Shown here: piece by piece, positions 14,801 to 42,667 of the stretch
Numbering within the stretch: the first letter of the stretch is position 1
How the letters are laid out: every line of letters starts with the position of its first letter
Virus record (IMG/VR): IMGVR_UViG_3300043446_003193
Coordinates: 124,001 to 188,000 of that record
DNA: 64,000 nucleotides
Direction: 5' to 3' (one strand)
Made by a program: the position numbers and the translations under genes
Notes under the pieces: model-generated
Told to the model about the DNA's origin: nothing
The model's database searches: none
Seen by the model: only the letters and a program-made list of their open reading frames with translations

Positions 14801-15562
14801 ATGAAGTACAACACCTAAACTTATTTCAGTATCCCATTGATTTATATCCGCACTACCCCAAGCATTAGTTTGTTGTACATCTTGTCCATATTCATCAATA
14901 CCAACATATGTTATTTTTGCCGAACCAGAATACTTTATCGGTAAATTGGTTTTTGCATCCCAACTTACTTTTTTAACTGTTGGAAATGGATCTTGAGTAA
15001 GGGATGCATTTAACTTAACAATAAGACCCTCACCTGCTGATATACTAAATGTAGTTGAACCAGGCGTAGAACTCAATACACCACCTTTAAGAACACCTGT
15101 GTAAAGATTACTTTCTAGCCATCTTAAACGAGTTACATTGGTATATCCTTCTCCGTTTTGTGAAAAGTATAAATCATTTGTTGAACCGGAAACATAAATA
15201 TAAGATGCTGAAATAGAAGTATCTATATTAGTAGATACTGGCATAAATTGAACATACCCCTTAATAGTTTCACTACCAGATACATTTAATGCTCCAGTTA
15301 AAGATGTTACACCAATTAAAGTATTTGAACCCGTTGTATATAATGATCCTGTAATTACTACATCTCCGATAGTATTTAATGACCCACTATTTTGTGTATT
15401 TGTTGTGAAAATCTCTTGAATAGTTTCACCATTGGAGCCAGATTTTTCAAAATAAATCTTACCATCGTAAGTATTTATCGCTAATTCTCCTAAATCTAAT
15501 TGAGCAGTAGTTGGACGGTTTCCAGCTACGGCACTCCTACGCAACTTAATTGTTTGGGCCAT
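11888..15562 (-). CDS. Fibre/spike with Mtd_N-like N-terminus and pectin-lyase-like beta-helix
   Basis: N-terminal IKLRRS...P...L.LGELAINTYDGKIYF; internal WYVS.DG.D.NDG...FRTIKAA...VKSGYYVE..PI.VP..VSI.GDDLR is a typical beta-helix cap. Confidence 0.7.
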   Translation of the reverse strand: MAQTIKLRRSAVAGNRPTTAQLDLGELAINTYDGKIYFEKSGSNGETIQEIFTTNTQNSGSLNTIGDVVITGSLYTTGSNTLIGVTSLTGALNVSGSETIKGYVQFMPVSTNIDTSISASYIYVSGSTNDLYFSQNGEGYTNVTRLRWLESNLYTGVLKGGVLSSTPGSTTFSISAGEGLIVKLNASLTQDPFPTVKKVSWDAKTNLPIKYSGSAKITYVGIDEYGQDVQQTNAWGSADINQWDTEISLGVVLHLSGSVSTGVYNSPQIAYGAQQQNDDFTRAFGPLKISGHTLAPSGSTLSIVKGAGVSYKQGANYVNNPNHPSSISESAINTSKIYRYHLSGSTSIIDTGVGNSGYSVIDPTKYVDQTTGLLTTVDGTNPNNYQWTIQRVFWIPNSPTNAFIVYYGNGQYTTLLNAQNAISNESFVEAPNTAQNGIFVAYLLVRADCTNLADSNTAAIIQGGLFRSINGIGASGTNPISVTLGGLSDVAISGISAGDTLVFNGGQWVNSKSLNGTYQLTGSLYSTNTISASILQATQISGSLYGNASTATSASNVLYSNIGQKPTLVSGSVQIDVLQTTNIDKIALTGSNTFRDNQIISGNLDVTGTITAKEYHVTLVSSSVLYTSGSNKFGNTGDDKHEFTGSVVISGSLLITGSVSLRDSLTVGGTLIATALSGSGAGLTDIGVTEKVWYVSEDGLDTNDGKTLSTSFRTIKAAITAASASLAANPGLPVYRQSVQVKSGYYVEEAPITVPSNVSILGDDLRSVVVRPTTGTKGENLFLMNNGTYCWGLRLEGCEIDDLDDPRQGFFFAFAPNAYIVTSPYVQNCSAISTPADKFYVPLDYENNNPLVGNGPGGMIVDDSVLHPYSPLKSMIVDAYTQVAFNGIGICIRGRGYGQLVSFFTNFSSTGVYCIDGGHASLLNSNTTFGDYGLRAEGLRMLVKPDISAVSASIDTDASLLVSAQKSNIQTYMINKLALSGSYASSYVSGSGSRYASTITDSGLVVDAIAADLLVPKAARTSQFTQGLFKGQDISGTGLYTLPVAATSSFTQGVITVIPQISNTSGSLAGDFVLAWQYMKEYIITDPDSHFTTLSVPAKNKIGQLFDVIINTIDTVVIQGAGKEYLEEFGSLITSTSHDFSYAGAGVNFLALPVNQGGVGETNYDIRISEVSGGRVFHTSGDETGDFYAGNDFVIRQATGTIEGRTFTKALSAQFTPLNLALEN

Positions 15563-25457: not shown

Positions 25458-27083
25458 TTATAAAGTGTTTAAACCGTTTACGATAATCTTACCGTAGAAT
25501 TCTGGTCTAACGATCTTCTTAGCGTAACGAGTCATAACTCCTCTTCTTGGAGTGAAGTTAGTTGGATCGTACACTAAAGGAGTCATAATCAATGGAACAT
25601 ATGGAGCGTATACAGCACCTGTCTCAAAGAAGTTAGAACCTTTAAATCCTAATAAGATAACGTTCTCAGTCATGTATGGGTTTTTGTAAACATCATATCT
25701 GTTAGAGATAGAACCGATGTTAGTTACACCTGCAGCAAATTGTAAAGCATCTTTACCAGGATTTGCAGAGAAACCGTTCATTGATTCCAAAATAGTTGCA
25801 ACGTTTGGAGATACTACTACGAAGTTAGCACCACCTCTCATTGTTAACTGATGGATTTTGTTAGATACCTTTTGTAATTTGATACCTAAAGTTTGATACC
25901 AAGTACTCTTAGTGTATGCAGAAGCAGCTGCTGCGTTAGAATCTACCGCGAATGCTCCAGTTGCACTATTGTAATCGTATCCAACTCTTGCATCCCAATA
26001 ATCAGTTGTGAATGCGTTTTGTTGTAACATTTCTAAGATTTCCAAATCAATTTCTAAAGAAATGTACTCAGATAACATTTGAGTTAACTCAGCTTCAGCG
26101 TCTACACTATGGTAAGCATTTAAGTCTTGAGCTAATTCAGGAGTCCAAATTGCTTTCAACTTACGAGTCTTAGCAACGATTGGTTCTGATTTCAATTCTA
26201 ATTCAATTTCTGGAATGTCTAAGTTTGAACCTTTATCTTCAAAGTCACCTCTGTTTTCAGCAGATGGTTGCTTATGATAAGATAATGTAGCACCACCAGC
26301 ACTTACACCACCTGCAGATCCTGTACCGTAGAATTCTACTGAAGTACCATTGATCTTAGTGTATTTAGGATAGTAGTTGTTAGCTGTGATAGAACCAGAT
26401 TGTAAGATTTCAAATGCTCTTACACCGTTCCAATCAGCATCAGTTGGTAAAGTTACAGTTACTTTTTTGATACCACCAGCTGCTAAAGAAGCAGATAAGT
26501 CAGCGTCAAAATTGATATCAGCCCAAGATGCAGTTGCAACTGTTGCGTCTAACGCTGCTGATGTATCGTTGATTGTATAACCAAATCTTCCAGCTCCGTA
26601 AAGACCACCTTCAGCAACTTGAGTAGAACCCAATTTGTTACCGTGAGATGCTTCAGAGTTGTAAGTTAAGTTATCCTTACCGAAAGTACCACCTTTACCG
26701 AATAATGAATTACCGTTAAAGTCTGGGTTACCAGCTTGTGAAGTACCATATTTGAAGTCCATGTAGAAAATAAGACCTGAAGGTAAGTTCATAGGTTGTA
26801 CTGAAACGAATTCTTTAGCTGCGATAGAACCGAAGATTCTTCTTACTAAAGGTAACGCAACACCAGCCCATTCTTCAGAACCTGCTGAAGTACCTGTTCT
26901 TGTAGCCTCATCCAATAATTGCTTAGCTTGGTTTTCTAACATTACTGCCATACCATGCTTAGTAGTTTCTGAACCTACTCCTTCAAGTAAGCCAGTTTTT
27001 TCCCATTTGCTTTTCAAACCTCTAGTTTGCTCAAGCATTACGCTCTGTGGGTTAGCGCCTGTCATTAATTTTTTTAAGTCCAT
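25458..27083 (-). CDS. Major capsid protein (T4 gp23 family)
   Basis: LPLVRR, VSVQPMNLPSGLIFY, AKTRKLKA.WT.ELAQDL.A.H..DAEAEL, YAPYVPL, F.PRRGVMTRY are gp23 signatures. Confidence 0.97.
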   Translation of the reverse strand: MDLKKLMTGANPQSVMLEQTRGLKSKWEKTGLLEGVGSETTKHGMAVMLENQAKQLLDEATRTGTSAGSEEWAGVALPLVRRIFGSIAAKEFVSVQPMNLPSGLIFYMDFKYGTSQAGNPDFNGNSLFGKGGTFGKDNLTYNSEASHGNKLGSTQVAEGGLYGAGRFGYTINDTSAALDATVATASWADINFDADLSASLAAGGIKKVTVTLPTDADWNGVRAFEILQSGSITANNYYPKYTKINGTSVEFYGTGSAGGVSAGGATLSYHKQPSAENRGDFEDKGSNLDIPEIELELKSEPIVAKTRKLKAIWTPELAQDLNAYHSVDAEAELTQMLSEYISLEIDLEILEMLQQNAFTTDYWDARVGYDYNSATGAFAVDSNAAAASAYTKSTWYQTLGIKLQKVSNKIHQLTMRGGANFVVVSPNVATILESMNGFSANPGKDALQFAAGVTNIGSISNRYDVYKNPYMTENVILLGFKGSNFFETGAVYAPYVPLIMTPLVYDPTNFTPRRGVMTRYAKKIVRPEFYGKIIVNGLNTL

Positions 27084-27106: not shown

Positions 27107-28324
27107 TTATTTAATAATACCTGCTAATTTCTTAAATCTGTCAGAAAAATCAGCTGATTCAGCAATTACTTGCTTAGCTGCTGCTGGCTTAGTAGATTTT
27201 ACTGCTTTGCTAGCGATTCCTTCAGAAATAGATTTTTTAGTAGATTTGTTAGATGAAGAATATTTGAAATTCTCTGCTAATGTAGAGTAAACCAATTTAA
27301 CTTCTCTAACTGATTTTGTTCTATCCAAAGTTTCAATCACTTTAACTTTTTGTTCGTTAGTCATGTTGTGTGCTCTGAATAATTTGTTAGCGAATAACAA
27401 CTTAGCGTTCAATAAGTTCACTTCGTTGATTGTTTTTTGTAAAGACTTGATAGTTTTGTAAGCTTCGTTAAGTTCTTTTTCTTTTTCTTCTTCTTCAGCT
27501 TCGTCAACTTTCTCTTTATCGTCTTTCATATCCGCTTCCATTTCACGTAAGATTTCTTCTAAATCAACAACGTCTTTGTCATCTTCTTTAGATTCTTCTT
27601 CGTTGGTTACAACCACTTTAGGGTCTTCACCTTTGTCTGTACCTGCTTCAGAACCATCTGCTAAATTTTCGTTTTTAGCTTCTTCATCTTCTTCAGCTTC
27701 GTACATAGGTTTTTCTTCTTCTTCAGAATCTTCACCTTCTAATTGAGCTTCTAATTCTCTGATGATAGCTTCTAAGTCCATGTCATCTTCTGTTTCTTCT
27801 TCTTCAGAACCAGTTACGTCATAGTCTTCACCATCTTCTTCTCCTGTCTCATCCGCACCCGCAGTAAATGCTGGTAATTCTTCTTCAGAATCTTCTCCTT
27901 CTAATTCTGCTAATCTAGCTTTTAATTGAGCGATTTCGTCTTGTTTTGCAACTTCGTCATCACCAGCTTGATCATCAGCGAAAGGATTTTCTTCTTCAGA
28001 GATATCTGCTACCTTTTTGAAATCATCAACTTGTGCACCTGGTTCGCCAGATGTTGTTTCAGTTGAACCTGCTTCAAATTCAGTATCAGCGTCTAATGTA
28101 GGATTAGATGTAGATGCACCAATGTTTGATGAATCTAATTCTTCGTCAACTTTTTCAGCTTCTTTATCTTCAGCTTCAGCTTCTGCTCTTAACTTTGCAG
28201 ATAAGATAGATTGAAGTCTTGGAGTGAAAGCCTCTTCAAGTGCGATTTTTGCGTTTGCTAAAGCAGTTTCTTTTACAGCTTTGGCATCAGCGATTGCTTC
28301 TTTCAATAATTTTGAATTTGCCAT
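27107..28324 (-). CDS. Prohead core scaffold protein (gp22-like)
   Basis: Very acidic coiled-coil protein directly upstream of the capsid gene; ends FKKLAGIIK. Confidence 0.75.
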   Translation of the reverse strand: MANSKLLKEAIADAKAVKETALANAKIALEEAFTPRLQSILSAKLRAEAEAEDKEAEKVDEELDSSNIGASTSNPTLDADTEFEAGSTETTSGEPGAQVDDFKKVADISEEENPFADDQAGDDEVAKQDEIAQLKARLAELEGEDSEEELPAFTAGADETGEEDGEDYDVTGSEEEETEDDMDLEAIIRELEAQLEGEDSEEEEKPMYEAEEDEEAKNENLADGSEAGTDKGEDPKVVVTNEEESKEDDKDVVDLEEILREMEADMKDDKEKVDEAEEEEKEKELNEAYKTIKSLQKTINEVNLLNAKLLFANKLFRAHNMTNEQKVKVIETLDRTKSVREVKLVYSTLAENFKYSSSNKSTKKSISEGIASKAVKSTKPAAAKQVIAESADFSDRFKKLAGIIK

Positions 28325-28489: not shown

Positions 28490-28510
28490 TAGAAAACTAA
28501 AGAAAATTAG
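28490..28510 (+). repeat. AGAAAACTAA-AGAAAATTAG tandem (candidate operator)
   Basis: TAGAAAACTAAAGAAAA (17 nt) is identical to 55574-55590. Confidence 0.7.
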
Positions 28511-28686
28511 TGATTATACTTATTTTTTCTTATAGTTTCTTCTTTTTGTAACCTTTTTTTAATAGAAGGTTTAGTAAAGTTCTTTCTTTCTCTAAGTTCT
28601 TCTATTTGTTTTATGGACTGAACTTTCTTTTTATATTCCTTTAATGCCCACTCTATGTTTCCGTTTTTCACGTTAACTATTAACAT
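28507..28686 (-). CDS. rpsU: 30S ribosomal protein bS21 (phage-encoded; 59 aa, absent from ORF track)
   Basis: My translation: MLIVNVKNGNIEWALKEYKKKVQSIKQIEELRERKNFTKPSIKKRLQKEETIRKNKYNH*. It has the S21 pattern V...NIE.ALK..K.K......ELR.R..F.KPS..R, with an MLI(I/V) start as in Bacteroidota S21. Confidence 0.9.
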   Translation of the reverse strand: MLIVNVKNGNIEWALKEYKKKVQSIKQIEELRERKNFTKPSIKKRLQKEETIRKNKYNH

Positions 28687-28692
28687 AACTAA

Positions 28693-28992
28693 TTAATATG
28701 GTGTTTGATATTCCAATTGTTTTTTTAATTCTCTTTCGTATTCCTTTTCAATTTTATCTAAATCATCTTTAGCAGATTTAATATCTTCTTGATGTTTTTT
28801 TAATTGATAAAGATATTGGTTTTTTCTATCTTCGTTTTGTTCATCAAAATATGCTTTACTCATCATTTTTTGACGAGTTGTTAATCCTTCATATTTTCTT
28901 ATAGCATCAATGTATGCAGATGATGCTTTTCTAAAACCGGCTCTTATTTTAACTGCTTCTTCTTTTAAAGGAATTAGATTTATTAGTTTCAT
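28693..28992 (-). CDS. Putative internal head protein
   Basis: Coiled-coil 99 aa beginning MKLINLIPLKEE. Confidence 0.5.
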   Translation of the reverse strand: MKLINLIPLKEEAVKIRAGFRKASSAYIDAIRKYEGLTTRQKMMSKAYFDEQNEDRKNQYLYQLKKHQEDIKSAKDDLDKIEKEYERELKKQLEYQTPY

Positions 28993-29363
28993 TATTGTAA
29001 ATTAACTAATTTATATTTTGTAGAATATAATAAAGTTACAATCGTATCAATATCGTTTTGTAACCAACTCATTTGTAACTTTTCATCTTTTCTTAATTTC
29101 TCAACTGCTTTACAAAGTTTTTCAAAATAAGAAATTATATTTTTGATATCATTGTTAGTATCAATACCACTTACTGGTTGAACTTTGATTAATCCGTACT
29201 GTCCTTGATATGCTTCCACTAATCCATCTACTAATCCACCAATTGAATCGTAATATGTACCTAAAGCCAAATGAGCAGATAATGCACCAACACCTTTAAC
29301 TCCCCAATGGAAAGCATGTGCTTGTGTTCTACTGTGTAATAATAATGATGCTAATTGTTCCAT
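28992..29363 (-). CDS. Ferritin/Dps-like four-helix protein (DUF5856-like)
   Basis: QAH.FHW...HLALG.YYD.I..LVD.LVE.YQG.YG...LQN.ID.I..L...T.YKL pattern. Confidence 0.75.
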   Translation of the reverse strand: MEQLASLLLHSRTQAHAFHWGVKGVGALSAHLALGTYYDSIGGLVDGLVEAYQGQYGLIKVQPVSGIDTNNDIKNIISYFEKLCKAVEKLRKDEKLQMSWLQNDIDTIVTLLYSTKYKLVNLQ

Positions 29364-29792
29364 TTATTTACAAGTTTTACATTCGTTAATTCCCAGTCTT
29401 TGTTTCATCACATCTTCAGAAATATCTGCTATTTCAAAATATCTTCCTAATACATGTCCCATATCTTCATAAAGAGCCTCTAATCTTTGTTGTTGTGCTC
29501 TAGCTTCTACTGCTTCCTTTTCAAATGAAGTTTGTAACTTTTTAAGTTCATTCATATTTCTCTTAATAGTTACTCTATCAAACCAATCTCCACCTTCTCT
29601 TAAAGTATATTCTTGTGCTGCATCTGCAATACCACCCAATGTTTCTGCAATTTGCATAATATCAGATTTTCTACTCATACCTTCTCTATGTTGGTTATAT
29701 GTAGAAATTATTTCTAAGAAGTGTTTTTTTAATTCAGAAGGCAATTGTTCTAATTGTTCTTCTTCTTTCAATAAATCTTTTAACTTTATCAT
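29364..29792 (-). CDS. Putative internal head protein
   Basis: 142 aa helical, begins MIKLKDLLKEEE. Confidence 0.5.
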   Translation of the reverse strand: MIKLKDLLKEEEQLEQLPSELKKHFLEIISTYNQHREGMSRKSDIMQIAETLGGIADAAQEYTLREGGDWFDRVTIKRNMNELKKLQTSFEKEAVEARAQQQRLEALYEDMGHVLGRYFEIADISEDVMKQRLGINECKTCK

Positions 29793-30067
29793 CTATGTAC
29801 GATTTTATACTTTTTTAATCTTTGTACTGCCTGAGATAAGTCCTGTGGAGTCATATCTAATGCGTCTACTAATTTAGCAATAACTAATTGTTCTTTTTTT
29901 CTTGGTAAGTTATATGATTTAATAACTTGCAATGCTCTATCTAAAAATCTTTCTACTTTAGAAGGTAGATTAACATCCATATCTTCCAAATCTTCATTCA
30001 TTTCTTCTTTTGAAAGAACTACTGCAGTTGTATAATTAGCCGGTATTAAGTTTATTAACTTTGCCAT
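29789..30067 (-). CDS. Putative internal head protein
   Basis: 92 aa, begins MAKLINLIP; ATGA overlap with the next gene. Confidence 0.5.
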   Translation of the reverse strand: MAKLINLIPANYTTAVVLSKEEMNEDLEDMDVNLPSKVERFLDRALQVIKSYNLPRKKEQLVIAKLVDALDMTPQDLSQAVQRLKKYKIVHR

Positions 30068-30068
30068 A

Positions 30069-30659
30069 TTAGTTTAATTCAATTATGATTTCTCTCATTA
30101 AATCCTGTGATTTACACCACTTACCACATTCTTCTGCCATCTGTTTCCATTGTTTAGATTCGTTCATTGGTGCCATAAATGCTCCATGTGTAGATGGATT
30201 AGAAACAAAATCCCAACCTACTAATTCAAAATCTTCTTGAACCATTACAGTTCCATCTCTTAATTCTTTAACAGACCCTAAACCTCTTGATGAAATACCT
30301 AAACGAATATTATTCTTTAATAATTCTTTTAATATGTTACCAGATGGAGTTGAAAGTATTTCTACTACACCACATACATCATCACCTTCCCAAAAAATTT
30401 CTCTAATATTGTGAGATACATTTTTTAAGTTAATTACTGGAGAATCCGGATGGTCTAATTCACCCAACGCTCTTCTTTCTTTAATGAGTTGTTCGTATTT
30501 TTTACACTCTCTTTCCAATATTTCACGTGGATATCTTCTACCATTTTGGTTTGCAGCCCCAGCTCTTTGAAGAATGCCCTTAACTAAATAAGTACCATTT
30601 TCTTCTTGTTGAAGTTTTGCTTCAAATAAGTGTGTTTCTATTAATAGTCCTTTGTTCAT
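30069..30659 (-). CDS. Prohead core protease (T4 gp21 family)
   Basis: NQNGRRYP, ALGELDHP, INL.NVSH, TPSGNI, LGISSRGLGS, DFVSNPST..AF signatures. Confidence 0.95.
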   Translation of the reverse strand: MNKGLLIETHLFEAKLQQEENGTYLVKGILQRAGAANQNGRRYPREILERECKKYEQLIKERRALGELDHPDSPVINLKNVSHNIREIFWEGDDVCGVVEILSTPSGNILKELLKNNIRLGISSRGLGSVKELRDGTVMVQEDFELVGWDFVSNPSTHGAFMAPMNESKQWKQMAEECGKWCKSQDLMREIIIELN

Positions 30660-30952
30660 TAGTCTTTTTTTCTTAATGCTGCTAAATCAGAACCTTCAAT
30701 TTCTCCGTCTTTATCAACATCAATTTGTTTTTGCTTATCAGTCAATTCTGCTTCATTATATCCTCTTAATCTACCTTCTGATTTTGCTTTATAAGCAGTA
30801 TCAACCGCATTAAAGAATTTTTTCTTATCATCATCACTCATAGAGCTGATATCTTTGCCACTCTTATCTAACATATGTTTAAACAATTGCTGATAATCGT
30901 TTTCTTCTTTAACTACCTGACGGATAAGTTCTTTTAATTGTGATGTTTTCAT
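30659..30952 (-). CDS. Putative internal head protein with EF-hand-like loop
   Basis: MKTSQLKELIRQVVKEE start; C-terminal DVDKDGEIEGSD. Confidence 0.55.
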   Translation of the reverse strand: MKTSQLKELIRQVVKEENDYQQLFKHMLDKSGKDISSMSDDDKKKFFNAVDTAYKAKSEGRLRGYNEAELTDKQKQIDVDKDGEIEGSDLAALRKKD

Positions 30953-31549
30953 TTATTCTGATATTTTACGAATTTGTTGCTCTAATTTTATCAATCTTTC
31001 CTTTATAGTATAAATATGTTTATTTGTTCTTTTCCAAAAATTCTGATTACTTACACCACTTTCTTGCTTTATTTTACCATACCAATTCAAAAACCTTTCC
31101 ATTTCAGCAAGTTGTTTACTTATATTAGAAATTCCTTTTCCTATTTTGTGTGTTGCAGGAACATTTTCTTTTTTAAGTTCTAACCAACGATTTTCTTTAA
31201 CAACACTATATCCAGTTAAATCTGCTTGCCTTTTTCCTTTAGATTTTTCATCACCTTTTTTAGTGAACGCATATGGAGTATTATAAGGACCAGCCGCATC
31301 GCTAGTTGTCATTTCATCAACCATTCGTTCTCTAACCATTTTACGAATGATTTCTTTTATTTTTTGAAGTTCTTCTTCCTTTTTATCAGGTAATCCAGCG
31401 TGTTTTGTAGATGCAAAATCTTTAGCATCTTTATCGGACATTGAATCTGCTGCTTTTTGTACTTCTGGAGATGGGTTTTCCATATCACCTTTTTGAGCGG
31501 CATGAACCATTCCCATAAATCTTTGTTGTGCTTTAGATACTGCTGGCAT
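30953..31549 (-). CDS. DUF3008-like multi-module head protein
   Basis: MPAVSKAQQRFMG...DFASTKH.GLP.K N-terminal module followed by further modules after Glu sites. Confidence 0.6.
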   Translation of the reverse strand: MPAVSKAQQRFMGMVHAAQKGDMENPSPEVQKAADSMSDKDAKDFASTKHAGLPDKKEEELQKIKEIIRKMVRERMVDEMTTSDAAGPYNTPYAFTKKGDEKSKGKRQADLTGYSVVKENRWLELKKENVPATHKIGKGISNISKQLAEMERFLNWYGKIKQESGVSNQNFWKRTNKHIYTIKERLIKLEQQIRKISE

Positions 31550-32725: not shown

Positions 32726-34474
32726 TTACTCTTTTGTTAAATCTTCTGTCAAAATCTTCTTTTTGTTACCATTCATATCTTTGAAAACTTCTAAATATGA
32801 ATTTTTTGGAACATATTTTTTAACAGAACCTTCTTTCGCTTTAAGAGTTTTTATTCCTAATGGGTCTCTACCTTCTGGATGGTCATCCTTACCATATCTA
32901 ACTGGGTCTTTAGGTCTACCAACCCCATCTTCCTCTAATTCTGCTTTTAATTTATTTAATTCTTCTTCAACATTTGTAGGGCCTTCGGTTCCAGTTTCTT
33001 TTGCTGGATCTACACCCTGTGTTTCAATTGATGTTAAACGGAATGTTTGTTTAGTATCTTCTAATATTGAAAGTGTTTGCTCATCTTGTTCATCTTTAGC
33101 CATTCCCATTATAGCTTGATACATCCATTCTTTAGAGAACATTTTTGTTTGTTGCATTTGTTGAATTAATGCAACTTTAGATGTATACAACTCTACTTTC
33201 TCTTGCTCATAAATTTTAGATGGAATAGTTAATTCCAATGTAAAGTTTGTTAAACGGTCATCATCAATACCTTGTGCGTATAAGTGGATGATTGCAATTT
33301 TGGTTAATTCAGAAACCATAACTCTTTGTATTCTCTCAATGGTTTTTGCAAATCTAACATCCATCGCTGCAAGAGTTGCTTTACCATTTGTATCTTCTTC
33401 ATATCCTAAATATGCTTTTGGAATTTGAAGTGCTGCCATCAATTTATTTTTAAGATAATTGATGTCTTCAATCATATTGTATTCCAACCCTTTTAGAGTA
33501 TCAATTGAAGTACCATTATCATTACCTCTTACTGGCATATAATAATCTTCAATCAAATTCTGTATATTGTATTTTAAATTATATTCACCCGTTCTTTCAT
33601 CAACAAATGGAACTTTTTTAGATGCATTTATAATTTTTTGCATGTAGTTATCTACCTCATTTGGTGGAATATTACCTACATCAATTTTAAAGATTCGTTT
33701 TTCAGGTGCTCTCATTACTCTATGAATCAACATAGCATCTTCCATCAACATCAATTGTTTCCAAACTCTTCTTGCACCTTCTAACATTGATTTACCATAT
33801 GGAAGGAAGTTGGAATCGTTATTTAAACGGAAGTGAGCAACTTCATAATTTTCAAATTCTTTTTTAGGAGTTTGTCCATAAGAACCCAATGGGTTTTGAT
33901 ATGGAGCGTATACAAATTTAACTCTTTGTGGATTTTGTTGGTCAAACCCTTCAACTCTACTAACTTCATATGAAGAAAGTGGCATAACATTTACAATACC
34001 AATTCCTTCTTCTGCTGCGATTTCTAATTGTAAATATAAATCACCATATTTTACTAAATTTCTTGTCCATGGCCATAAGTTAAATTCAACATTTAAAATA
34101 TCGTAGAAAAGATTTTCTAATATTTGTTTTACATTATCATCTTCGTGATGAATTTTTAAAACATTACCCATTTCATTTCTAGCAGTACACTCATCTGCAT
34201 ATGTATTTAATGCTGATGATAGTATTGGGTCTGTATCCATTGAATCGTAATCTCTGAACAAGTCAATTCTAACTTGTTGATATGCCATTGATGATTCAAT
34301 GTTACCAGTTCCATAATTTGTAACCTTTAATTTCATAAAGCGGTCAACAAGATTAGTGGTCATATTTTGCCACTCATCTGTATCAATTACTTTAACTCCC
34401 TTTTCGGTTTTACGAACTATGGTGTTTGTTGAAAATAATTTTTGTAACCTGCCTAATACTGATTTATCTGCCAT
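32726..34474 (-). CDS. Portal protein (T4 gp20 family)
   Basis: LMLMEDAMLIHR.MRAPE.RIF.IDVGN.P, EDYY.P.RG...T.IDTL.G, EDI.Y...KL..AL.IP. Confidence 0.95.
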   Translation of the reverse strand: MADKSVLGRLQKLFSTNTIVRKTEKGVKVIDTDEWQNMTTNLVDRFMKLKVTNYGTGNIESSMAYQQVRIDLFRDYDSMDTDPILSSALNTYADECTARNEMGNVLKIHHEDDNVKQILENLFYDILNVEFNLWPWTRNLVKYGDLYLQLEIAAEEGIGIVNVMPLSSYEVSRVEGFDQQNPQRVKFVYAPYQNPLGSYGQTPKKEFENYEVAHFRLNNDSNFLPYGKSMLEGARRVWKQLMLMEDAMLIHRVMRAPEKRIFKIDVGNIPPNEVDNYMQKIINASKKVPFVDERTGEYNLKYNIQNLIEDYYMPVRGNDNGTSIDTLKGLEYNMIEDINYLKNKLMAALQIPKAYLGYEEDTNGKATLAAMDVRFAKTIERIQRVMVSELTKIAIIHLYAQGIDDDRLTNFTLELTIPSKIYEQEKVELYTSKVALIQQMQQTKMFSKEWMYQAIMGMAKDEQDEQTLSILEDTKQTFRLTSIETQGVDPAKETGTEGPTNVEEELNKLKAELEEDGVGRPKDPVRYGKDDHPEGRDPLGIKTLKAKEGSVKKYVPKNSYLEVFKDMNGNKKKILTEDLTKE

Positions 34475-34494: not shown

Positions 34495-34525
34495 TGAAGA
34501 TACGAAAAATAATTGGAATTACCAA
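34495..34525 (-). promoter_or_regulatory. Bacteroidota-type promoter (variant) upstream of portal
   Basis: Minus strand TTG-N20-TATCTTCA. Confidence 0.5.
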
Positions 34526-35586
34526 GCTCTACAACTCCAATATCTTGCTTTCCATCTTGGGCCTGGATTATCACAATTATGTCTCGCTCTAAAATTCTTT
34601 CTTCTTTCTGGATTATCTTTTTTAATAACCATTCTCTTTCCTTTTGCAGATGTACCACCAAATCCAAAGTTTACTTTAACAACATTTCCTTTGTCGTTTT
34701 TAACATATACTTTAAATTTCTTTACATCACCTTGCATTGGTTTACCTAATTTAACACTTCTACCTTGATATTCTGCTTCATATACACAATTACAATTTGC
34801 CTCTGCAAGTTGTTTGGTATATTCTCTCATAAATTTAATAAAATCATGAGTATCTTGTTCGTTTTCTACATCATACTCATCAATTTCTGTTGCGTCATCT
34901 CCATAGTATCCACCAGGTTGGTCGTTTTCTTTTACAGGTACACAGTTTGGAACCATTTTACCATTTTTCATTTTACCACCAATTTCTCTATATCCATCCC
35001 AACATTCATGTAATGCATTTAGTTCTCCTAAACTTTCATCACATTTTCTCCAACCACCACCTTTTTCTTTGTAGTTTTTTGCGGCCCATCCATTTGCATA
35101 TGCTGATGGGTATACATCAAATTTAGACTTAGCAGCGGATTTAGATGCTGCCCATTTACCAGGGTCTGTTGGGCAATTCTTTTCTAAGAATAAATTTAGT
35201 TTTTCTTCTATATTCATAGTTTCATTTTTTTTCTTTCCTGCGCAATGTGCTTTTTGACTAAAACCTTTTGGATTATTACAGTCTATACTATTTTTATATT
35301 TTTGACTCCAATCTTCATTTTTTGGTTTAGTAGAAACATATATAGGTGTTTTACCTTGTCCACTACTATCTTTACCACCTCTTCCCGCATCGTTTTGTGC
35401 AGCTCTCTTTCTACGAGTTGCACTTTCTTTCTCTTTCTTACTCATTCCGGCAGCTTTTGCAGCGGGAACACATTTGGCATATCCACTTTTATCTCCAGAA
35501 GTTCCACATGGTGGGTGTTTACCATCAACTTTCTTGCCGATGTTTACCCATTTTTCTTTAAACCATTTATTTAAATCTTCGTTCAT
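34519..35586 (-). CDS. Multi-module basic Cys/Trp-rich protein (candidate polyprotein)
   Basis: 355 aa made of about five short basic modules separated by acidic xxE linkers. Confidence 0.7.
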   Translation of the reverse strand: MNEDLNKWFKEKWVNIGKKVDGKHPPCGTSGDKSGYAKCVPAAKAAGMSKKEKESATRRKRAAQNDAGRGGKDSSGQGKTPIYVSTKPKNEDWSQKYKNSIDCNNPKGFSQKAHCAGKKKNETMNIEEKLNLFLEKNCPTDPGKWAASKSAAKSKFDVYPSAYANGWAAKNYKEKGGGWRKCDESLGELNALHECWDGYREIGGKMKNGKMVPNCVPVKENDQPGGYYGDDATEIDEYDVENEQDTHDFIKFMREYTKQLAEANCNCVYEAEYQGRSVKLGKPMQGDVKKFKVYVKNDKGNVVKVNFGFGGTSAKGKRMVIKKDNPERRKNFRARHNCDNPGPRWKARYWSCRAW

Positions 35587-35617: not shown

Positions 35618-37225
35618 TTATCCAATTAACCAGGTTAAATTTTCTGTTCCTTTTTTTCCTAAATCCATTTCATATGGATTTTGTTTTAAATGGTTAGTGG
35701 ATATTAATCCTTCATATTTGTTTATTTGTGTTGCACCTAACATACTTTTAGTTAAGTCAATACCTTCTTGTTTTAAACGAAGTGCTGTATTTCTAACCCA
35801 AAGTCCAATTGCCATAGCCATTGTCAAGTCATCATTATAACCCTTCATAGCTTCTGCTCTTCCAGCTTGCCAAATAAATGTAAATAATTCATCTATCAAT
35901 CTACCAGAACGAATAAGGATATCTTTATCGTTTATGTAGGTATCTAATGTTGAAATAATAAGAGGACGAGTTTTTGATGTAGTAGAGAATCCTGCAACCA
36001 TTTTCTTTTCATCTCTATAAAATTTACTACTCATTTGTTTTTCTACATCAATATATTTTAAATCAACACTCATATAAAATAGATTTCCGTATCCTCTATC
36101 TATACATTGTTGAATTGTAGACCATCCTACGTTTGAGTTTTCTACTACTAGTAATGCGTTGTTCCATTCGGTTGCAACGGCTACTAAAAAGTTTCCAAAG
36201 TCTTTTGTTTCAATTTTACCTCTATATTCTGCAACTTGAGAACTATCCTCAATATCAATAACCTGAAAAGTAGAATAATCCGAACCATCTCCTCTCGCTA
36301 CGTCGGCCACTACCATATATTGTCTATTATAATTTGGATGTTCCCATTTCCAATAGTTACCATCAAACCCAGTTTTTTCTATCGGGTCCATCACATATGT
36401 ATCTTTATACCACATCAATAATTGAGGATCTATTACAGTGTCACCAGAAGATACGAAGTCACAGTCACATTCTTGTGCTGCACCTTTAACTCCTAAGATT
36501 CTTGTTTGTTCATCTCTCCACGCTTGATTTCTTTCAGGGTGTACAGTCCAATGTAGATTAATACAATTAAACCCGTTTGAACCATTTTCTCCTTCAACCC
36601 ACATTTTATGGAACCAGTTACCCACACCATTAGGAGTAGATAATACAATAGCAGCACCACCCGTTGAAAGTGTTGACTGTGCTGATAACCAAATTTCATC
36701 AATATCTCTAATGAATGCGGCCTCATCCACAACTAATAGGGATAGGGCTTCCGAACGTCCTGCATCAGGAGAACTTGCAATTGCTTTTACTTGAGAACCA
36801 TTTTTTAATTTAAGAGAAAGTTTGTTATCTTCAGCTGCTGCGGTTGAACCATCTCTTAACCAAACAGGAAGAAGGTCATGCATTACTCTAACCTTTTCAA
36901 CAAGGTTTTTGGCTACCGTAACTTTTGTTGCAATAACCAATGCATTAAAATCTTGATTAAATAACATTTTCCAAAGAATGTATCCTGCAGAAAGTGTTGA
37001 AAGACCTAACTGACGGGATTTAAGAATAATGTTAAAACGATTATCTTTAAAATCTGTTAAACATCCCTCCTGGAAAGGATAAAGGTGAAAGGGTATTTTT
37101 CCTCTCACCGGGTGCTGAATTACACAATATTTTTTCATAAAGTAAATGGGGTCTCCCGCACACTTACGATATTCTTCAGCGATTATCTCTTTCAGGCTCT
37201 TCTTTGGTTGAGCTTGAGCTTGCAT
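35618..37225 (-). CDS. Terminase large subunit (T4 gp17 family)
   Basis: Walker A ILKSRQLGLST, Walker B LLVVDEAAF, STPNG, RNase H-like ADVARGDGSDYS and NDDL.MA. Confidence 0.96.
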   Translation of the reverse strand: MQAQAQPKKSLKEIIAEEYRKCAGDPIYFMKKYCVIQHPVRGKIPFHLYPFQEGCLTDFKDNRFNIILKSRQLGLSTLSAGYILWKMLFNQDFNALVIATKVTVAKNLVEKVRVMHDLLPVWLRDGSTAAAEDNKLSLKLKNGSQVKAIASSPDAGRSEALSLLVVDEAAFIRDIDEIWLSAQSTLSTGGAAIVLSTPNGVGNWFHKMWVEGENGSNGFNCINLHWTVHPERNQAWRDEQTRILGVKGAAQECDCDFVSSGDTVIDPQLLMWYKDTYVMDPIEKTGFDGNYWKWEHPNYNRQYMVVADVARGDGSDYSTFQVIDIEDSSQVAEYRGKIETKDFGNFLVAVATEWNNALLVVENSNVGWSTIQQCIDRGYGNLFYMSVDLKYIDVEKQMSSKFYRDEKKMVAGFSTTSKTRPLIISTLDTYINDKDILIRSGRLIDELFTFIWQAGRAEAMKGYNDDLTMAMAIGLWVRNTALRLKQEGIDLTKSMLGATQINKYEGLISTNHLKQNPYEMDLGKKGTENLTWLIG

Positions 37226-38581: not shown

Positions 38582-41500
38582 TTATTCATAAAAAATACCA
38601 AGTATCTGATTTAATGGTGCGAATGTACCTGTAAGTTTATATGTTTTTCCATTATAAAAGAATACCAGTCCTTCATTTGCCACTATTCTTTCAATTCCAC
38701 CCAATCTATTCAATCTACTCAATTCTTGTTTTAATTTTTGAATTTGTGCAGGATTGCCAGAAGTTTTAACTTGATCGGCAACTGTTTTTAATCGTGATTT
38801 CATTGAACGAATTGCCTTATCAGGATGAACCGTCAATACACTACCAACAAATTCTAAAACATCTGCACCTACTCCTAAAAATATTTCTTCAAATGGTTTG
38901 ATATTATCTTTTTGTTGTTTTGCAACATTTACTTTATCATTATTCATTGCCCAGTCTTGTAACTTAGGATTTGATATTGTATTTAATCTAAAAGATTTAT
39001 CACCAAATGCCCATCTTCTAATTAAAGCTTCTTTTGTAAGTTTATCAACTTTAACAGGTGCGTTTGATGTAATCCACCAATCCCACCAACTTTGATGATA
39101 ATCTGCTACATTATCTGAATCTTTTAATCCAAATTCGGATTGTAATTTTGAAATCTTAGAAAGATATTTTGATTGTTTAGAACTTAAATCTTCTGATTTT
39201 GGAATTTCAGTTATTGGTGGTCCTTGAATTGTGTATTTAGATTGAACATCTGCATTTACTTGCTTAATCATACCTGCTAATACACTCTCTGCTCCATCCA
39301 CCTTACCAACAGCGTTTCCTTTTTCATCATATTCTATACAATTGTGAAATACTAAAAGTGCTTGTCCGTAAGGAATAACATTTACCGAAGTTGGCCAAAT
39401 TACTTCAATATTCATAAATTTGGTTCCTTCACCAAATACTTTTTCTCTTTGTTTTTGAGATAATGCAGATACTGCTGCTGAAAGGTCTTTCATTGCGTAA
39501 TTATATGCATCTGTTAAACCACCTCTTCCGCCAAATTTTGATGCAACATCTTCAATGCCCATTGCACTTGCTCCACCATTTGATAAATGTCCTTTATTTC
39601 TAGCTGCAATTAATCTACCATTTTTCCAGCTGATTGCTAACGCCTGTCCATCGGTTTTTTCTCTTACTACACCTAAATCCCCATTAAGTGCTTTTGTAAC
39701 GATATCTTTAAGGTGTCCAAATGTCAAATCCATATCATCAAATGGATGACTCATATGACCATATGCCCCACCTTCCATTAATAGACCTTCTTTTAAAAAT
39801 TCAGTTGGTTTTTCATCAAATCTAGGTAGGTTTCTTGCAGAATATTTTACAGTATATTGGGTTTCATCTTCATCACCCCATATTGCATCTGCTATTGGAA
39901 AATCCATCTGCGTATATCCACCACTATAATACCAATCATCTCCTTTATTTACACCATCGTCTGCGTCTAATTTTCTAGTATGTCCTTTTGGTAAATAAGC
40001 ACCATCGGCTTGAGAATCTGCATCAGCTAATCCACTTATTTCATTTATATACATTTCAATATCTTCGTATAATTTTGAAATTTGTTCGTCAAAGTTAGGT
40101 TTGATGTTTAATTCTTTTTCCATTTTAGTTATCTCATCATATCCCATATTTCTCAATGATCTTGCAACATCATTTGCTTTATATCCGTTTGGATTTCCGA
40201 ATAAGTATGCATTTATTCTTTTTCTGAATGTTGAATTTTTATATGCATCAATTAAATTTTTAAAATGAACATCATTGGAACCCATTTCATCTATTTTACG
40301 AAATGTAGTTGCCTGTCTTCCATTTATTGTTGGCATTCCATGATCATCCTTTCCAATATCTTTAACTTGTACCTTTTTATTTTTAAACTTACCCATTAAA
40401 ATAGTATCACCCGTATCAACATCTACATTAACATCTTCTTTGTTAATTTCAATTGCTGCCAGTTGCTTTTTAGCAGATGCTAACGAATCATGAGTTCCTA
40501 ATCTATCTCCACCATTTTTTGGATATACAACATATTTGTCACCAACTTTTTTTATGGTTTCGTTTACATTTTCATTGTAGATTTGTTTGTTGATTCTACC
40601 ATATTCTCTCATTAGAATTCCTGCAACTGCATGTGCTTGGTTTTCTATTGGAGAACCATCTGCACCATCTTTTTCTAAATTTCTAACTAACCCCAATTCA
40701 TCTTGCTTTCTATGAACCATTTCATGTGCAAGAGTTCTTAGGATATCTGCTGTTAATCTACCTTCGGTTGCAACATATATGGATTTATCTTCAGGATTAT
40801 ATCCACCTAAACTTGTTTTTACTTCTGCGAATTCTCTTCCACCAACTAATGTAACATTTGGTGTTTCTTTTAATTTTAATCTTTTAGTTGCAAATTCTAC
40901 AAAATGTTGAATAGATTGTTGTTTTGTTTCTGATAAATTTTCATTTAAAGAAAACTTACTAATCATTTTTTTATTATTCCAACTATCTGCTATTTTTTCC
41001 GCAATTTCAGGAGTAATATCCATATTTTCTATTCTTTCTGCAATTGCGGCTGCAAATATATTTAGTGCACTTGCTTCATCAATATCTTCGGCAAAAATAG
41101 CAGCTTTTCCTACACCAGTTGCAACTACTTCTGTTACAGCATGTGGTATCAATTCCATAGCCGTATGTTTTACCAACCCAGCAGCACCATGTGCCAATCC
41201 GCCACCAACTGCTGCAAATAATGCTGTTGTAGCTATTTTAATACCAACGGATTTTAAAGCTTTTTTCTGCTTATCATCTAATTTACCACCAGCCATTAAA
41301 GTTTTTACACTACTACCAGCTGTTTTAAATGTATCATATTCATGCTTCAAACCATGCATAATTGCATGTCCAGCACCTTTTGCTTTGTCCATTATAGCCT
41401 GACCCCAACTTCTTCTCTCATCGTGTCCTTCTTTTTTATTTAATAACTTAGAAAAAGTTTGTTTTTCTTCTTTACTCCAATTTTTTACTTTTTCTTGTAT

Positions 41501-42667
41501 TCTTTTTACTTGACCTTCTTTTGTATTTCCTGATTTTTCTTTTTGTGCATTTTTTTCAGCATCAGATTTTAATTCTACACCAGATAATTTTTGTTCTGGA
41601 GGCGGACCTTGTTGGGTATCAGAATCGGTTCCTATTGGAGAAGTTTTTTCTTTATCTATTTTTCCTTGAGTGGTTTGTCCTTGTTTTGTTGGTTGTCCAG
41701 GCTCAGATGGTTTAGCTGCTTGAGTTGCTGCTTTTCCAGGTTCTTCTTTTTTCTTTGGTTGATTAGCAGGAGCATCGGCTGGCCCAGCTATTTTAGCAGC
41801 TTGAATATGTGCAGGATGCTCTTTAGGTAATCGTAATGCATCTCTTGCTTTAATTTTCTTTTGTTGTCCTTTTGAATTTGTATATGTTATATCAACGTCT
41901 AATGCAGGATTTTCAGCTTCTCCAAAATATTGATTTGTAAATTCTTCAAACATTTCATTGGTAATGTAGTTTTGAATTATTTCAGAAATAGGATCATATA
42001 CATAATCATCGTCTGTTGTAGCTACTGCTCTAATTTCTTTATTCTTTTTTTCAATAGCCTCTACATCTTCTTTTGAAGGGTATCCTCTATATAATTCTTC
42101 GTTAAGTTTGGTTGTTATCATTTTGAATATTTCTCTATCAAATTTTGGATATGCTTTTAAGAAAAACTTTTTAGCTTTTTCTTTATCATTACTTCCCAAT
42201 CCTTTTCTAACTTGAGTTCCACTAATTGGATTTGGTTCTGGAGGGATAGGATATGTATAACCAATTTCATCATAACCATATCCAGATTTTCCGTTATATG
42301 GTTTGAAATATTTACCTTGTAACCTTGTTGCATCTTTTTCACCAACTGCTGCAATATAAGCAGTAGTTTTTCCATCAAACTTTCCAAGTATTTCTACCGG
42401 TCTATATGGGTTAGAAACTTTAACAAATTTTGAAGCAGGAACTCCAAACATTGTAGTTGCTATTTCTTTTTTTTCTTTAAAAGTAAATGGTGATTTATCT
42501 GAAGATGTATCATTAGAACTTGCTATATAGACATTTGCTTCTCCAAACTGAGAAACTAATCTTTGATACGCATCATAATGTCCTCTGTGAAATGGTTGAA
42601 AACGACCACCGTATATTACGATAGTTTTTTTAACCTCTGGTTTATTCACTTCTTTTATTAAATTCAT
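38582..42667 (-). CDS. Multidomain protein: HxGH nucleotidyltransferase + HExxH metallopeptidase-like + RNA-ligase-like (DUF6267-like) domain
   Basis: YGGRFQPFHRGH at the N-terminus; LRTLAHEMVH mid-protein; C-terminal GHMSHPFD...EKTDG...EGLVF...YKLTG. Confidence 0.75.
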   Translation of the reverse strand: MNLIKEVNKPEVKKTIVIYGGRFQPFHRGHYDAYQRLVSQFGEANVYIASSNDTSSDKSPFTFKEKKEIATTMFGVPASKFVKVSNPYRPVEILGKFDGKTTAYIAAVGEKDATRLQGKYFKPYNGKSGYGYDEIGYTYPIPPEPNPISGTQVRKGLGSNDKEKAKKFFLKAYPKFDREIFKMITTKLNEELYRGYPSKEDVEAIEKKNKEIRAVATTDDDYVYDPISEIIQNYITNEMFEEFTNQYFGEAENPALDVDITYTNSKGQQKKIKARDALRLPKEHPAHIQAAKIAGPADAPANQPKKKEEPGKAATQAAKPSEPGQPTKQGQTTQGKIDKEKTSPIGTDSDTQQGPPPEQKLSGVELKSDAEKNAQKEKSGNTKEGQVKRIQEKVKNWSKEEKQTFSKLLNKKEGHDERRSWGQAIMDKAKGAGHAIMHGLKHEYDTFKTAGSSVKTLMAGGKLDDKQKKALKSVGIKIATTALFAAVGGGLAHGAAGLVKHTAMELIPHAVTEVVATGVGKAAIFAEDIDEASALNIFAAAIAERIENMDITPEIAEKIADSWNNKKMISKFSLNENLSETKQQSIQHFVEFATKRLKLKETPNVTLVGGREFAEVKTSLGGYNPEDKSIYVATEGRLTADILRTLAHEMVHRKQDELGLVRNLEKDGADGSPIENQAHAVAGILMREYGRINKQIYNENVNETIKKVGDKYVVYPKNGGDRLGTHDSLASAKKQLAAIEINKEDVNVDVDTGDTILMGKFKNKKVQVKDIGKDDHGMPTINGRQATTFRKIDEMGSNDVHFKNLIDAYKNSTFRKRINAYLFGNPNGYKANDVARSLRNMGYDEITKMEKELNIKPNFDEQISKLYEDIEMYINEISGLADADSQADGAYLPKGHTRKLDADDGVNKGDDWYYSGGYTQMDFPIADAIWGDEDETQYTVKYSARNLPRFDEKPTEFLKEGLLMEGGAYGHMSHPFDDMDLTFGHLKDIVTKALNGDLGVVREKTDGQALAISWKNGRLIAARNKGHLSNGGASAMGIEDVASKFGGRGGLTDAYNYAMKDLSAAVSALSQKQREKVFGEGTKFMNIEVIWPTSVNVIPYGQALLVFHNCIEYDEKGNAVGKVDGAESVLAGMIKQVNADVQSKYTIQGPPITEIPKSEDLSSKQSKYLSKISKLQSEFGLKDSDNVADYHQSWWDWWITSNAPVKVDKLTKEALIRRWAFGDKSFRLNTISNPKLQDWAMNNDKVNVAKQQKDNIKPFEEIFLGVGADVLEFVGSVLTVHPDKAIRSMKSRLKTVADQVKTSGNPAQIQKLKQELSRLNRLGGIERIVANEGLVFFYNGKTYKLTGTFAPLNQILGIFYE

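What the first reader, a model, noticed from the sequence alone, without database searches (positions are those of the whole stretch)
28693..31549. Family of capsid-targeting-like N-terminal leaders ending in Glu
Seen: unrelated small proteins around the protease begin MKLINLIPLKEE, MIKLKDLLKEE, MAKLINLIP...KEEMNE and MKTSQLKELIRQVVKEE. Similar segments occur in the scaffold (SKLLKE), the 1361-aa protein (MNLIKE) and inside the 198-aa protein (LQKIKEIIRKMVRE). Established: T4 internal proteins carry a short capsid-targeting leader removed by gp21 after (L/I)-x-E. Inference: a portable packaging tag for cargo injected with the DNA.
Basis: partly seen in the sequence, partly recalled or inferred. 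Interest (0 to 1): 0.6.

Follow-up and report, generated by a model that had tools for sequence, protein, structure and literature searches.

The report
Portable capsid-targeting-like leaders in a phage
A 209-kb T4-like phage of freshwater Bacteroidota puts the same 10-11-residue N-terminal tags, each ending in hydrophobic-x-Glu, on many unrelated proteins; this closely resembles the phage T4 tag that loads proteins into the head and is then cut off, but neither loading nor cutting has been measured.

Summary
The window lies in a 209,443-bp phage genome. Its head module has a T4 gp21-family (Peptidase_S77) protease and a gp23-family capsid protein.

- **Leader A** (MIKLKDLLKE) starts three unlinked, non-homologous genes in this genome. 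The DNA is 88-94% identical in the leader and at random level on both sides.
- **Leader B** (MKLINLIPLKE) starts two non-homologous genes next to the protease.
- **In IMG/VR**, leader A precedes 10 cargo clusters and leader B precedes 6. A scrambled control pattern gave 0 hits.
- **Where similarity stops:** exactly after the Glu.
- **Match to T4:** leader A has hydrophobic residues at positions 4, 7 and 8 and Glu at 10. These are the positions that govern targeting and processing in the T4 capsid targeting sequence.
- **Cultured relatives:** Flavobacterium phage Immuto and Microcystis phage Mel-JY01 show the same habit.
- **Weaker items:** leader C is confined to one family in this clade. The scaffold and 1361-aa motifs are weak.

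Packaging, cleavage and injection remain inferred. This is a new member of a known kind (T4-type capsid-targeting propeptides). It is useful as a sequence handle for finding packaged proteins in uncultivated phages.

The parts
30069..30659 (-). Prohead maturation protease, T4 gp21 family (Peptidase_S77), 196 aa. It is the presumed enzyme that removes the leaders.
   Evidence: Pfam PF03420 E 1.2e-29; PHROG 207 'head maturation protease' 4.6e-53. 37% identical to T4 gp21, with the GELxHP and SSRGLGS motifs kept.
29763..29792 (-). Leader A (MIKLKDLLKE) of the 142-aa protein (gene 29364-29792).
   Evidence: The same leader starts genome genes at 27837 and 41618. DNA identity is 88-94% in the leader and 21-33% in the flanks. 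M1, L4 and E10 are invariant in the 46 aligned distinct orthologues drawn from the 72 found through their cargo part; position 7 is I/L and position 8 is L/M.
28960..28992 (-). Leader B (MKLINLIPLKE) of the 99-aa protein (gene 28693-28992).
   Evidence: The exact leader precedes 6 cargo clusters in IMG/VR. Similarity ends after LKE.
30002..30067 (-). Leader B variant of the 92-aa protein (gene 29789-30067): MAKLINLIP, a variable spacer, then a hydrophobic-x-Glu site.
   Evidence: 63 orthologues keep M(A)KL[IV]NLIP, followed by a spacer of variable length ending in [IVT]-x-E. The layout is the same as T4 IPI. KLINLIP is identical to the 99-aa protein, but the DNA is only 62% identical.
30905..30952 (-). 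Leader C (MKTSQLKELIRQVVKE) of the 97-aa protein (gene 30659-30952).
   Evidence: Conserved in 76 orthologues. It sits on only one cargo family in IMG/VR. C-type MKKSQL... leaders sit on 4 non-homologous proteins in phage Immuto.
31328..31369 (-). Internal leader-like segment (residues 61-74) of the 198-aa protein (gene 30953-31549), behind an N-terminal DUF3008 domain.
   Evidence: DUF3008 covers residues 3-57. Residues 61-117 align with the very N-termini of the Immuto 73-aa (E 1e-8) and Mel-JY01 178-aa (E 2e-7) orthologues.
27107..28324 (-). Acidic scaffold-like 405-aa protein starting MANSKLLKE.
   Evidence: Lies between the protease and the capsid gene. The N-terminus is invariant in 43 of 49 relatives, but the Glu is N or Q in Mel-JY01 and Immuto, so a cleavage site here is doubtful.
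25458..27083 (-). Major capsid protein, gp23 family, with a candidate maturation site LLDE|A near residue 58.
   Evidence: Pfam Gp23 E 1.2e-77; homology to T4 gp23. [LIV]-x-E|A is kept in Mel-JY01 and Immuto. The site was placed by eye, not measured.
38582..42667 (-). 1361-aa protein with a cytidylyltransferase-like N-domain, starting MNLIKE.
   Evidence: PF01467 E 8e-7. Orthologues start MNLNE. This resembles T4 Alt's MELITE, but is too short to test.
34519..35586 (-). 355-aa protein between terminase and portal. In relatives its C-terminal CW[KD]GY domain carries leader B instead of the DUF5872 N-domain.
   Evidence: In the window the junction reads ALHE|CWDGY.

Best explanation
These are capsid-targeting-type propeptides, as in T4.

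**Proposed mechanism (inferred):**
1. A short N-terminal leader docks the newly made protein to the scaffolding core while the prohead assembles.
2. The gp21-family (S77) protease then cuts after the Glu of a hydrophobic-x-Glu motif at the leader's end.
3. The mature protein is left free inside the head. It either helps build the core or leaves with the DNA at infection.

**Shown here:** the leaders exist. They are shared by non-homologous proteins. Similarity stops at the Glu. Selection acts on the peptide. The phage has the T4-type protease, scaffold position and capsid protein. Leader A has the same residue pattern as the T4 tag.

**Inferred:** docking, cleavage, presence in the virion and injection.

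The proteins conserved in order around the protease are more likely core or assembly parts. The variable proteins of unknown family elsewhere in the genome are more likely delivered cargo. One of them probably has a ParB/sulfiredoxin-like fold.
For: 1. The protease is Peptidase_S77 and the capsid protein is gp23 family.
2. Leader A starts three unlinked genes of this genome. The cargo parts are unrelated, and DNA identity is 88-94% in the 33-nt leader against 21-33% on either side.
3. Orthologues found through their cargo part alone keep the leaders. For leader A, M1, L4 and E10 are invariant, position 7 is L/I and position 8 is L/M/I. This holds in the 142-aa family (72 orthologues) and in the 120 best of 975 homologues of the 335-aa protein.
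4. T4 work assigns targeting to CTS residues 4 and 7 and processing to residues 8 and 10 (PMC9026906). T4 IPII/IPIII start MKTYQEFIAE and gp24 starts MAKINELLRE.
5. In IMG/VR, leader A precedes 10 cargo clusters and leader B precedes 6. Each starts at a Met; for leader A an in-frame stop lies within 12 codons upstream in most genes. A scrambled control found none.
6. Leader B is identical in two proteins although 6 of 7 codons differ by synonymous changes.
7. Phage Immuto has three leader types on 9 non-homologous proteins. Mel-JY01 has MIKLKSLL[QK]E.
8. The internal segment of the 198-aa protein is the N-terminus in distant orthologues.
Against: - There are no virion proteomics, no N-terminal sequencing and no cleavage assay for this phage or any close relative.
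- The complex prediction of protease with the leader gave no verdict.
- Leader B has a proline and does not fit the 4/7/8/10 pattern.
- Helical hydrophobic moments of the leaders are unremarkable.
- P1' is acidic here, whereas it is A or S in the T4 sites read here.
- The generic motif also occurs on proteins that should not be in heads, such as the terminase and a protein next to baseplate gp25.
Confidence: 0.75

Rival explanations
1. The leaders are only protease-recognition propeptides of prohead-core or scaffold accessory proteins (like T4 gp67, gp68 and gp22). These proteins are degraded and expelled, so nothing is delivered to the host.
For: The 92-, 97-, 99-, 142- and 198-aa genes lie between portal and scaffold, where T4 has gp67 and gp68. 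They are kept in order in about 80 relatives. The 142-aa protein is predicted all-helical, though at low confidence.
Against: The same leaders sit on variable proteins of unknown family far from the head module (genome 27837 and 41618). In IMG/VR they sit on 10 and 6 unrelated cargo clusters, including a folded ParB/sulfiredoxin-like protein. This rival may still hold for the head-module subset.
Confidence: 0.15
2. The conserved element is nucleic acid: a translation-start region, a regulatory RNA or a recombination cassette. It is not a functional peptide.
For: The three leader A copies in this genome are nearly identical at the DNA level. Mobile regulatory cassettes are known in T4-type phages (own knowledge).
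Against: Conservation begins at the ATG and ends at the Glu codon, with random-level flanks. The leader B pair is identical as a peptide but only 62% identical as DNA. Leu and Pro codons vary freely among IMG/VR copies. Substitutions in orthologues are conservative: K/R, D/N/S, L/I/M.
Confidence: 0.03
3. The leaders address proteins to some other place or partner (host membrane, secretion, another phage assembly), or mark them for turnover. They would be unrelated to the head.
For: No direct evidence links them to capsids. One carrier of the generic motif lies beside a baseplate gene.
Against: The leaders are charged and lack a hydrophobic core, unlike the true signal peptides seen in the same genome. 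They cluster around the head protease. They end in the motif that this protease family cuts. One IMG/VR contig with a leader A variant (MLKFKDFLKEE) also encodes an S77 protease.
Confidence: 0.05
4. The resemblance is chance in a K/L/E/I-rich, AT-rich genome.
For: The loose motif is common: 2.3% of interior 20-residue windows.
Against: The trio is 9-10/10 identical, against an interior maximum of 6/10. IMG/VR gave 26 and 77 exact sites, against 0 for a scrambled pattern.
Confidence: 0.02

Closest known systems
Capsid targeting sequence (CTS) of phage T4 internal proteins IPI, IPII and IPIII (Mullaney and Black 1996; reviewed in PMC9026906 and PMC3012670)
   Same: A 10-19-residue N-terminal propeptide shared by otherwise unrelated proteins. 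Hydrophobic residues at positions 4, 7 and 8, and Glu at 10. A gp21-family protease in the same phage. A variant with a spacer before the cut site (IPI here matches the 92-aa family). Cargo is diverse and of unknown family.
   Different: No sequence identity beyond the pattern (K/L-rich, against MKTYQEFIAE). P1' is acidic. At least two or three leader classes occur in one genome. Many carriers lie inside the head module. The host is Bacteroidota. Nothing has been shown experimentally.
N-terminal propeptides of T4 gp24, gp22, gp67, gp68 and Alt
   Same: Short leaders ending in L/I-x-E on head proteins encoded beside the protease. gp24's MAKINELLRE resembles leaders A and B. Alt's MELITE resembles MNLIKE of the 1361-aa protein.
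   Different: Those T4 proteins have no detectable homologues among the leader carriers here. In T4 these leaders are not known as a shared cassette.
Propeptides of giant phages phiKZ, 201phi2-1 and SPN3US (S80 proteases)
   Same: Many inner-head and ejection proteins are cut after Glu. The SPN3US paralogues gp53 and gp54 have identical N-termini despite divergence (PMC5694885).
   Different: Those propeptides are mostly over 100 residues and the motif is S/A-x-E. The protease here scores far better as S77 than as S80.
bS21-encoding Bacteroidetes phages (Chen et al. 2022, PMC9723584)
   Same: The same kind of head module, with a bS21 gene among terminase, portal, protease and capsid genes. Freshwater origin and a Bacteroidota host.
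   Different: A term search of that paper found no mention of N-terminal leaders or propeptides. Its bS21 lies on the opposite strand, whereas here it is on the same strand.

Membership tests
T4-type capsid targeting sequence (CTS) propeptides | Short (10-19 residue) segment at the extreme N-terminus | tested here: met
   Leader A is 10 aa, leader B 11 aa (22 with spacer) and leader C 16 aa. Each starts at a Met; for leader A an in-frame stop lies within 12 codons upstream in most genes.
T4-type capsid targeting sequence (CTS) propeptides | Ends in hydrophobic-x-Glu, the gp21 cleavage motif | tested here: met
   E10 is invariant in 108 distinct leader A N-termini, and position 8 is L/I/M. Leader B ends in LKE and leader C in V[KR]E.
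T4-type capsid targeting sequence (CTS) propeptides | Hydrophobic residues at positions 4 and 7, needed for targeting in T4 | tested here: met
   Leader A has L4 invariant and L/I at position 7. The T4 requirement is taken from PMC9026906. Leader B does not follow this spacing.
T4-type capsid targeting sequence (CTS) propeptides | Same leader on otherwise unrelated proteins | tested here: met
   Three cargos in this genome; 10 (leader A) and 6 (leader B) cargo clusters in IMG/VR; no BLASTP similarity beyond the leader.
T4-type capsid targeting sequence (CTS) propeptides | Phage encodes a gp21-family protease, a scaffold core and a gp23-type shell | tested here: met
   PF03420 and PF07068 hits; an acidic scaffold-like gene lies between them.
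T4-type capsid targeting sequence (CTS) propeptides | Leader is removed by the protease | not testable with these tools
   The complex prediction gave no verdict. This needs N-terminomics or a cleavage assay.
T4-type capsid targeting sequence (CTS) propeptides | Leader is sufficient to load a foreign protein into the head, and the protein is delivered on infection | not testable with these tools
   Needs a reporter fusion in a cultured relative.
ParB/sulfiredoxin fold (335-aa leader A cargo, genome 40611-41618) | ParB/Srx fold with a DGHHR-type motif | tested here: inconclusive
   Atlas clusters are named ParB/Sulfiredoxin (0.94-0.98) and ParBc_2 (0.92). LDGHHRW is invariant in 37 homologues. 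The top Foldseek hits are sulfiredoxin and ParB, but at E 0.1-0.4. Pfam and PDB sequence searches were empty.

The most novel reading that the evidence does not exclude
One phage runs several distinct leader classes (A, B, C-type) in parallel. These could act as different 'addresses' in the prohead, meaning different docking partners, copy numbers or exit order. Because the leaders are so conserved, they could serve as a sequence-only key to list the packaged and injected protein arsenal of a large, abundant, uncultivated group of T4-like phages of Bacteroidota and cyanobacteria. That arsenal would include candidate counter-defence factors and a ParB/sulfiredoxin-like enzyme.
Probability: 0.25. 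Interest if true: 0.7.

Novelty: new member of a known kind. Interest (0 to 1): 0.5.

Why it matters
Outside the T-even phages, and apart from inferred propeptide targeting in phiKZ-like giant phages and discussion of P1, capsid targeting tags have hardly been described. The paper library held 21 papers with the term, and those listed concern T4, P1, P22 or giant phages.

If these leaders work like the T4 tag, three things follow:
- A simple motif search would reveal which proteins of unknown family are carried inside the heads of a very abundant freshwater phage group. More than 300 IMG/VR contigs encode a relative of the protease, and the best 80 are 93-100% identical.
- That set of proteins is a natural place to look for counter-defence factors.
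- It would give ready-made tags for loading foreign proteins into phages of Flavobacterium and Microcystis hosts.

If the prediction fails, the strict conservation of a 10-residue N-terminus on unrelated proteins would need a new explanation.

Tried and rejected
- **Complex prediction** of the protease with residues 1-40 of the 142-aa protein: no answer (score 0.02). It counts neither for nor against binding.
- **AlphaFold2 of the 142-aa family:** mean pLDDT 46, all-helical, not usable for a fold search.
- **Pfam and PHROG scans of about 25 cargo proteins:** nothing informative.
- **PDB profile search with the 335-aa family:** empty.
- **Degenerate DNA pattern over whole relatives:** it missed known leaders because Arg CGN codons were not covered. 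I replaced it by fetching the whole records and scanning proteins.
- **T4-type late promoter TATAAATA:** no clear link to leader genes.
- **Helical hydrophobic moment:** leaders A and C (0.44-0.45) equal T4 IPIII but lie within about 1 SD of all N-termini, so it does not discriminate.
- **Leader C as a portable tag in this clade:** rejected, because it has only one cargo family.
- **Scaffold LLKE as a conserved cut site:** doubtful.
- **First two protein-atlas calls:** failed because the machine was busy.
Full report
**Setting.** The window is bases 124001-188000 of a single 209,443-bp virus record. Nearly all genes are on the minus strand.

In transcription order the head module reads as follows:
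- large terminase (35618-37225)
- a 355-aa protein
- portal (32726-34474)
- 291-aa and 78-aa proteins
- a 198-aa protein
- a 97-aa protein
- a 196-aa protease
- 92-aa and 142-aa proteins
- a 123-aa DUF5856/Dps-like protein
- a 99-aa protein
- ribosomal protein bS21
- an acidic 405-aa scaffold-like protein
- the major capsid protein

The protease is Peptidase_S77, the T4 gp21 family (E 1.2e-29). It is 37% identical to T4 gp21, with the GELxHP and SSRGLGS motifs kept. The capsid protein is gp23 family. The nearest cultured phages by protease are Microcystis phage Mel-JY01 (61%) and Flavobacterium phage Immuto (51%). The group matches the bS21-encoding Bacteroidetes phages of Chen et al. 2022 (PMC9723584). 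A term search of that paper found no mention of leaders or propeptides.

**Checking the observation.** The proteins without their leaders show no BLASTP similarity to one another.

I compared the first residues of all 198 minus-strand ORFs of the genome. The best three pairs are a trio sharing M[IL]KLKDLLKEE (9-10 of 10 identical). The 99-aa/92-aa pair follows at 7 of 10, level with three pairs of likely paralogues, two of them tail-fibre-like. An interior control never exceeded 6.

Two members of the trio lie far outside the window, at genome positions 27837 (117 aa) and 41618 (335 aa). For the 335-aa gene, orthologues in two complete relatives have a stop codon shortly upstream of the leader's Met, which fixes the true start.

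**Peptide, not DNA.** Among the three leader A genes, DNA identity is 88-94% over the 33 leader bases and 21-33% in the 33 bases on either side. Conservation therefore starts at the ATG and stops at the Glu codons.

The leader B pair shares KLINLIP exactly, yet 6 of 7 codons differ by synonymous changes (62% DNA identity). Among IMG/VR copies the Leu and Pro codons vary freely. In orthologues found only through their cargo part, substitutions are conservative (K/R, D/N/S, L/I/M). In 108 distinct leader A N-termini L7 is L or I and position 8 is L, I or M; M1, L4 and E10 are also fixed in the cargo-found 142-aa orthologues.

**Portability.**
- Eighty IMG/VR relatives have a protease 93-100% identical to this one. 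In them, leader B sits on at least five different proteins of the head module.
- One of these is a CW[KD]GY-domain protein between terminase and portal. In the window that protein carries a DUF5872 domain instead.
- A scan of IMG/VR for the exact leader B found 77 genes in 6 cargo clusters.
- A scan for leader A found 26 genes in 10 cargo clusters. Each starts at a Met, and an in-frame stop lies within 12 codons upstream in most of them. A scrambled pattern of the same composition found none.
- In every case similarity ends right after the Glu.
- One of the leader A variant contigs also encodes an S77 protease. The others are small fragments.
- A search of all G000 N-termini against about 4000 ORFs of relatives showed mass sharing without cargo homology only for the leader A and B genes.
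- Leader C precedes only one cargo family in IMG/VR, so it is not shown to be portable in this clade.

**Wider relatives.** In the cultured phage Immuto, nine proteins that are non-homologous beyond residue 22 share three leader types:
- a C-type MKKS[QE]L... leader on four proteins
- a MENFDLKKFLVE leader on three proteins
- a 22-residue leader ending in IITE on two proteins

Mel-JY01 has MIKLKSLL[QK]E on three paralogues. This is the same leader A as here, on a different cargo.

The leader-like stretch inside the 198-aa protein (residues 61-74) aligns with the very N-termini of the Immuto and Mel-JY01 orthologues. So in this clade a DUF3008 domain has been fused in front of an ancestral leader.

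The 335-aa cargo shares its post-leader domain with a 694-aa protein. There, a 60-residue pro-region ending in YLNEE stands in place of the leader.

**Comparison with T4.**
- T4 IPII and IPIII start MKTYQEFIAE.
- IPI has a related start, then a spacer, then ITE.
- gp24 starts MAKINELLRE, gp22 starts MLKEQLIAE and Alt starts MELITE.

According to Kuhn and Thomas 2022 (PMC9026906), the T4 capsid targeting sequences are 10-19 residues long. Targeting depends mainly on residues 4 and 7, and processing on residues 8 and 10. Leader A is 10 residues long, with invariant L4, L/I at 7, L/M/I at 8 and invariant E10, which is the same layout. The 92-aa family (leader, variable spacer, second site) mirrors IPI.

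Rao and Black 2010 (PMC3012670) describe the T-even internal proteins as a diverse set sharing only the targeting sequence. That is the pattern seen here.

A likely capsid maturation site LLDE|A is kept as [LIV]-x-E|A in Mel-JY01 and Immuto. Its correspondence to the T4 site was judged by eye only.

**What the cargos are.** Almost all have no family assignment. The 142-aa protein is predicted all-helical at low confidence.

The 335-aa protein probably has a ParB/sulfiredoxin-like C-terminal domain. Four lines of evidence agree, but none is significant alone:
- Atlas neighbours.
- An invariant LDGHHRW motif.
- A model with pLDDT 70-88 over that domain.
- Top Foldseek hits to sulfiredoxin and ParB, at E 0.1-0.4.

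In that model the leader (residues 1-9) has low confidence and lies outside the folded parts.

**Mechanism and limits.** The best reading is a T4-type targeting propeptide. It docks to the scaffold core, is cut after Glu by the S77 protease, and the mature protein is retained in the head.

The steps shown are sequence facts and comparative patterns. Docking, cleavage, virion presence and injection are inferred by homology of the machinery and analogy of the tag.

The head-module proteins may be core parts like gp67 and gp68 rather than injected cargo. The complex prediction gave no verdict. The loose motif also hits the terminase and a protein beside baseplate gp25, so only the specific leaders carry weight. 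The scaffold LLKE and the MNLIKE of the 1361-aa protein remain weak.

**Verdict.** This is a new member of a known kind, of moderate interest. Its main value is as a handle for finding packaged proteins in an abundant uncultivated phage group.

Noticed in passing
window 28507-28686 (-): A ribosomal protein bS21 gene (Pfam E 5.5e-13) sits inside the head module on the same strand as the structural genes. In the clades of Chen et al. 2022 it is on the opposite strand. Mel-JY01 also has it on the same strand.
   Followed up: partly
window 28992-29363 (-): A DUF5856 / Dps-like 123-aa protein lies among the leader-bearing genes but has no leader. It is conserved in all relatives examined.
   Followed up: no
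window 30953-31549 (-); L007:3191-4864: The DUF3008-fronted protein varies from 195 to 557 aa among close relatives, while its N-terminal domain stays constant. This suggests C-terminal module swapping.
   Followed up: no
L131:2032-4488 (+): Two tandem paralogues, each with leader B, are fused into one 818-aa open frame. The second leader lies internally at residue 406. If it is cut there, one gene would yield two proteins.
   Followed up: partly
genome 40611-41618 (L004:1611-2618, -): The leader A cargo has an invariant LDGHHRW motif and weak ParB/sulfiredoxin fold matches. The first-start ORF call extends 37 codons upstream of the true Met.
   Followed up: yes
genome 83975-86059: A 694-aa protein shares a 64-residue domain (59% identity) with the start of the mature 335-aa cargo. 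In the 694-aa protein it sits behind a 60-residue N-terminal region ending in YLNEE.
   Followed up: partly
window 19144, 25358 and genome 40578, 83226, 118725: Several genes, some in the head-tail region, have the string TATAAATT directly in front of the ATG. This may be a start-context or promoter signal.
   Followed up: no
window 38582-42667 (-): A 1361-aa protein has a cytidylyltransferase-like N-domain. Its orthologues are 44% identical in the N-terminal two thirds but 70-72% identical in the last 400 residues.
   Followed up: no
genome 25001-30000 (L003): A cluster of proteins with signal-peptide or lipoprotein-type N-termini, including a 494-aa Ser/Lys/Glu-rich protein. This is typical of Bacteroidota hosts. 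Two small leader-bearing genes (117 and 67 aa) lie among them.
   Followed up: no
window 11888-15562 and 15680-17593 (-): Large tail-fibre-like proteins share a conserved N-terminus (MAQ.IK.RR...). These appear to be true paralogues, unlike the leader families.
   Followed up: no
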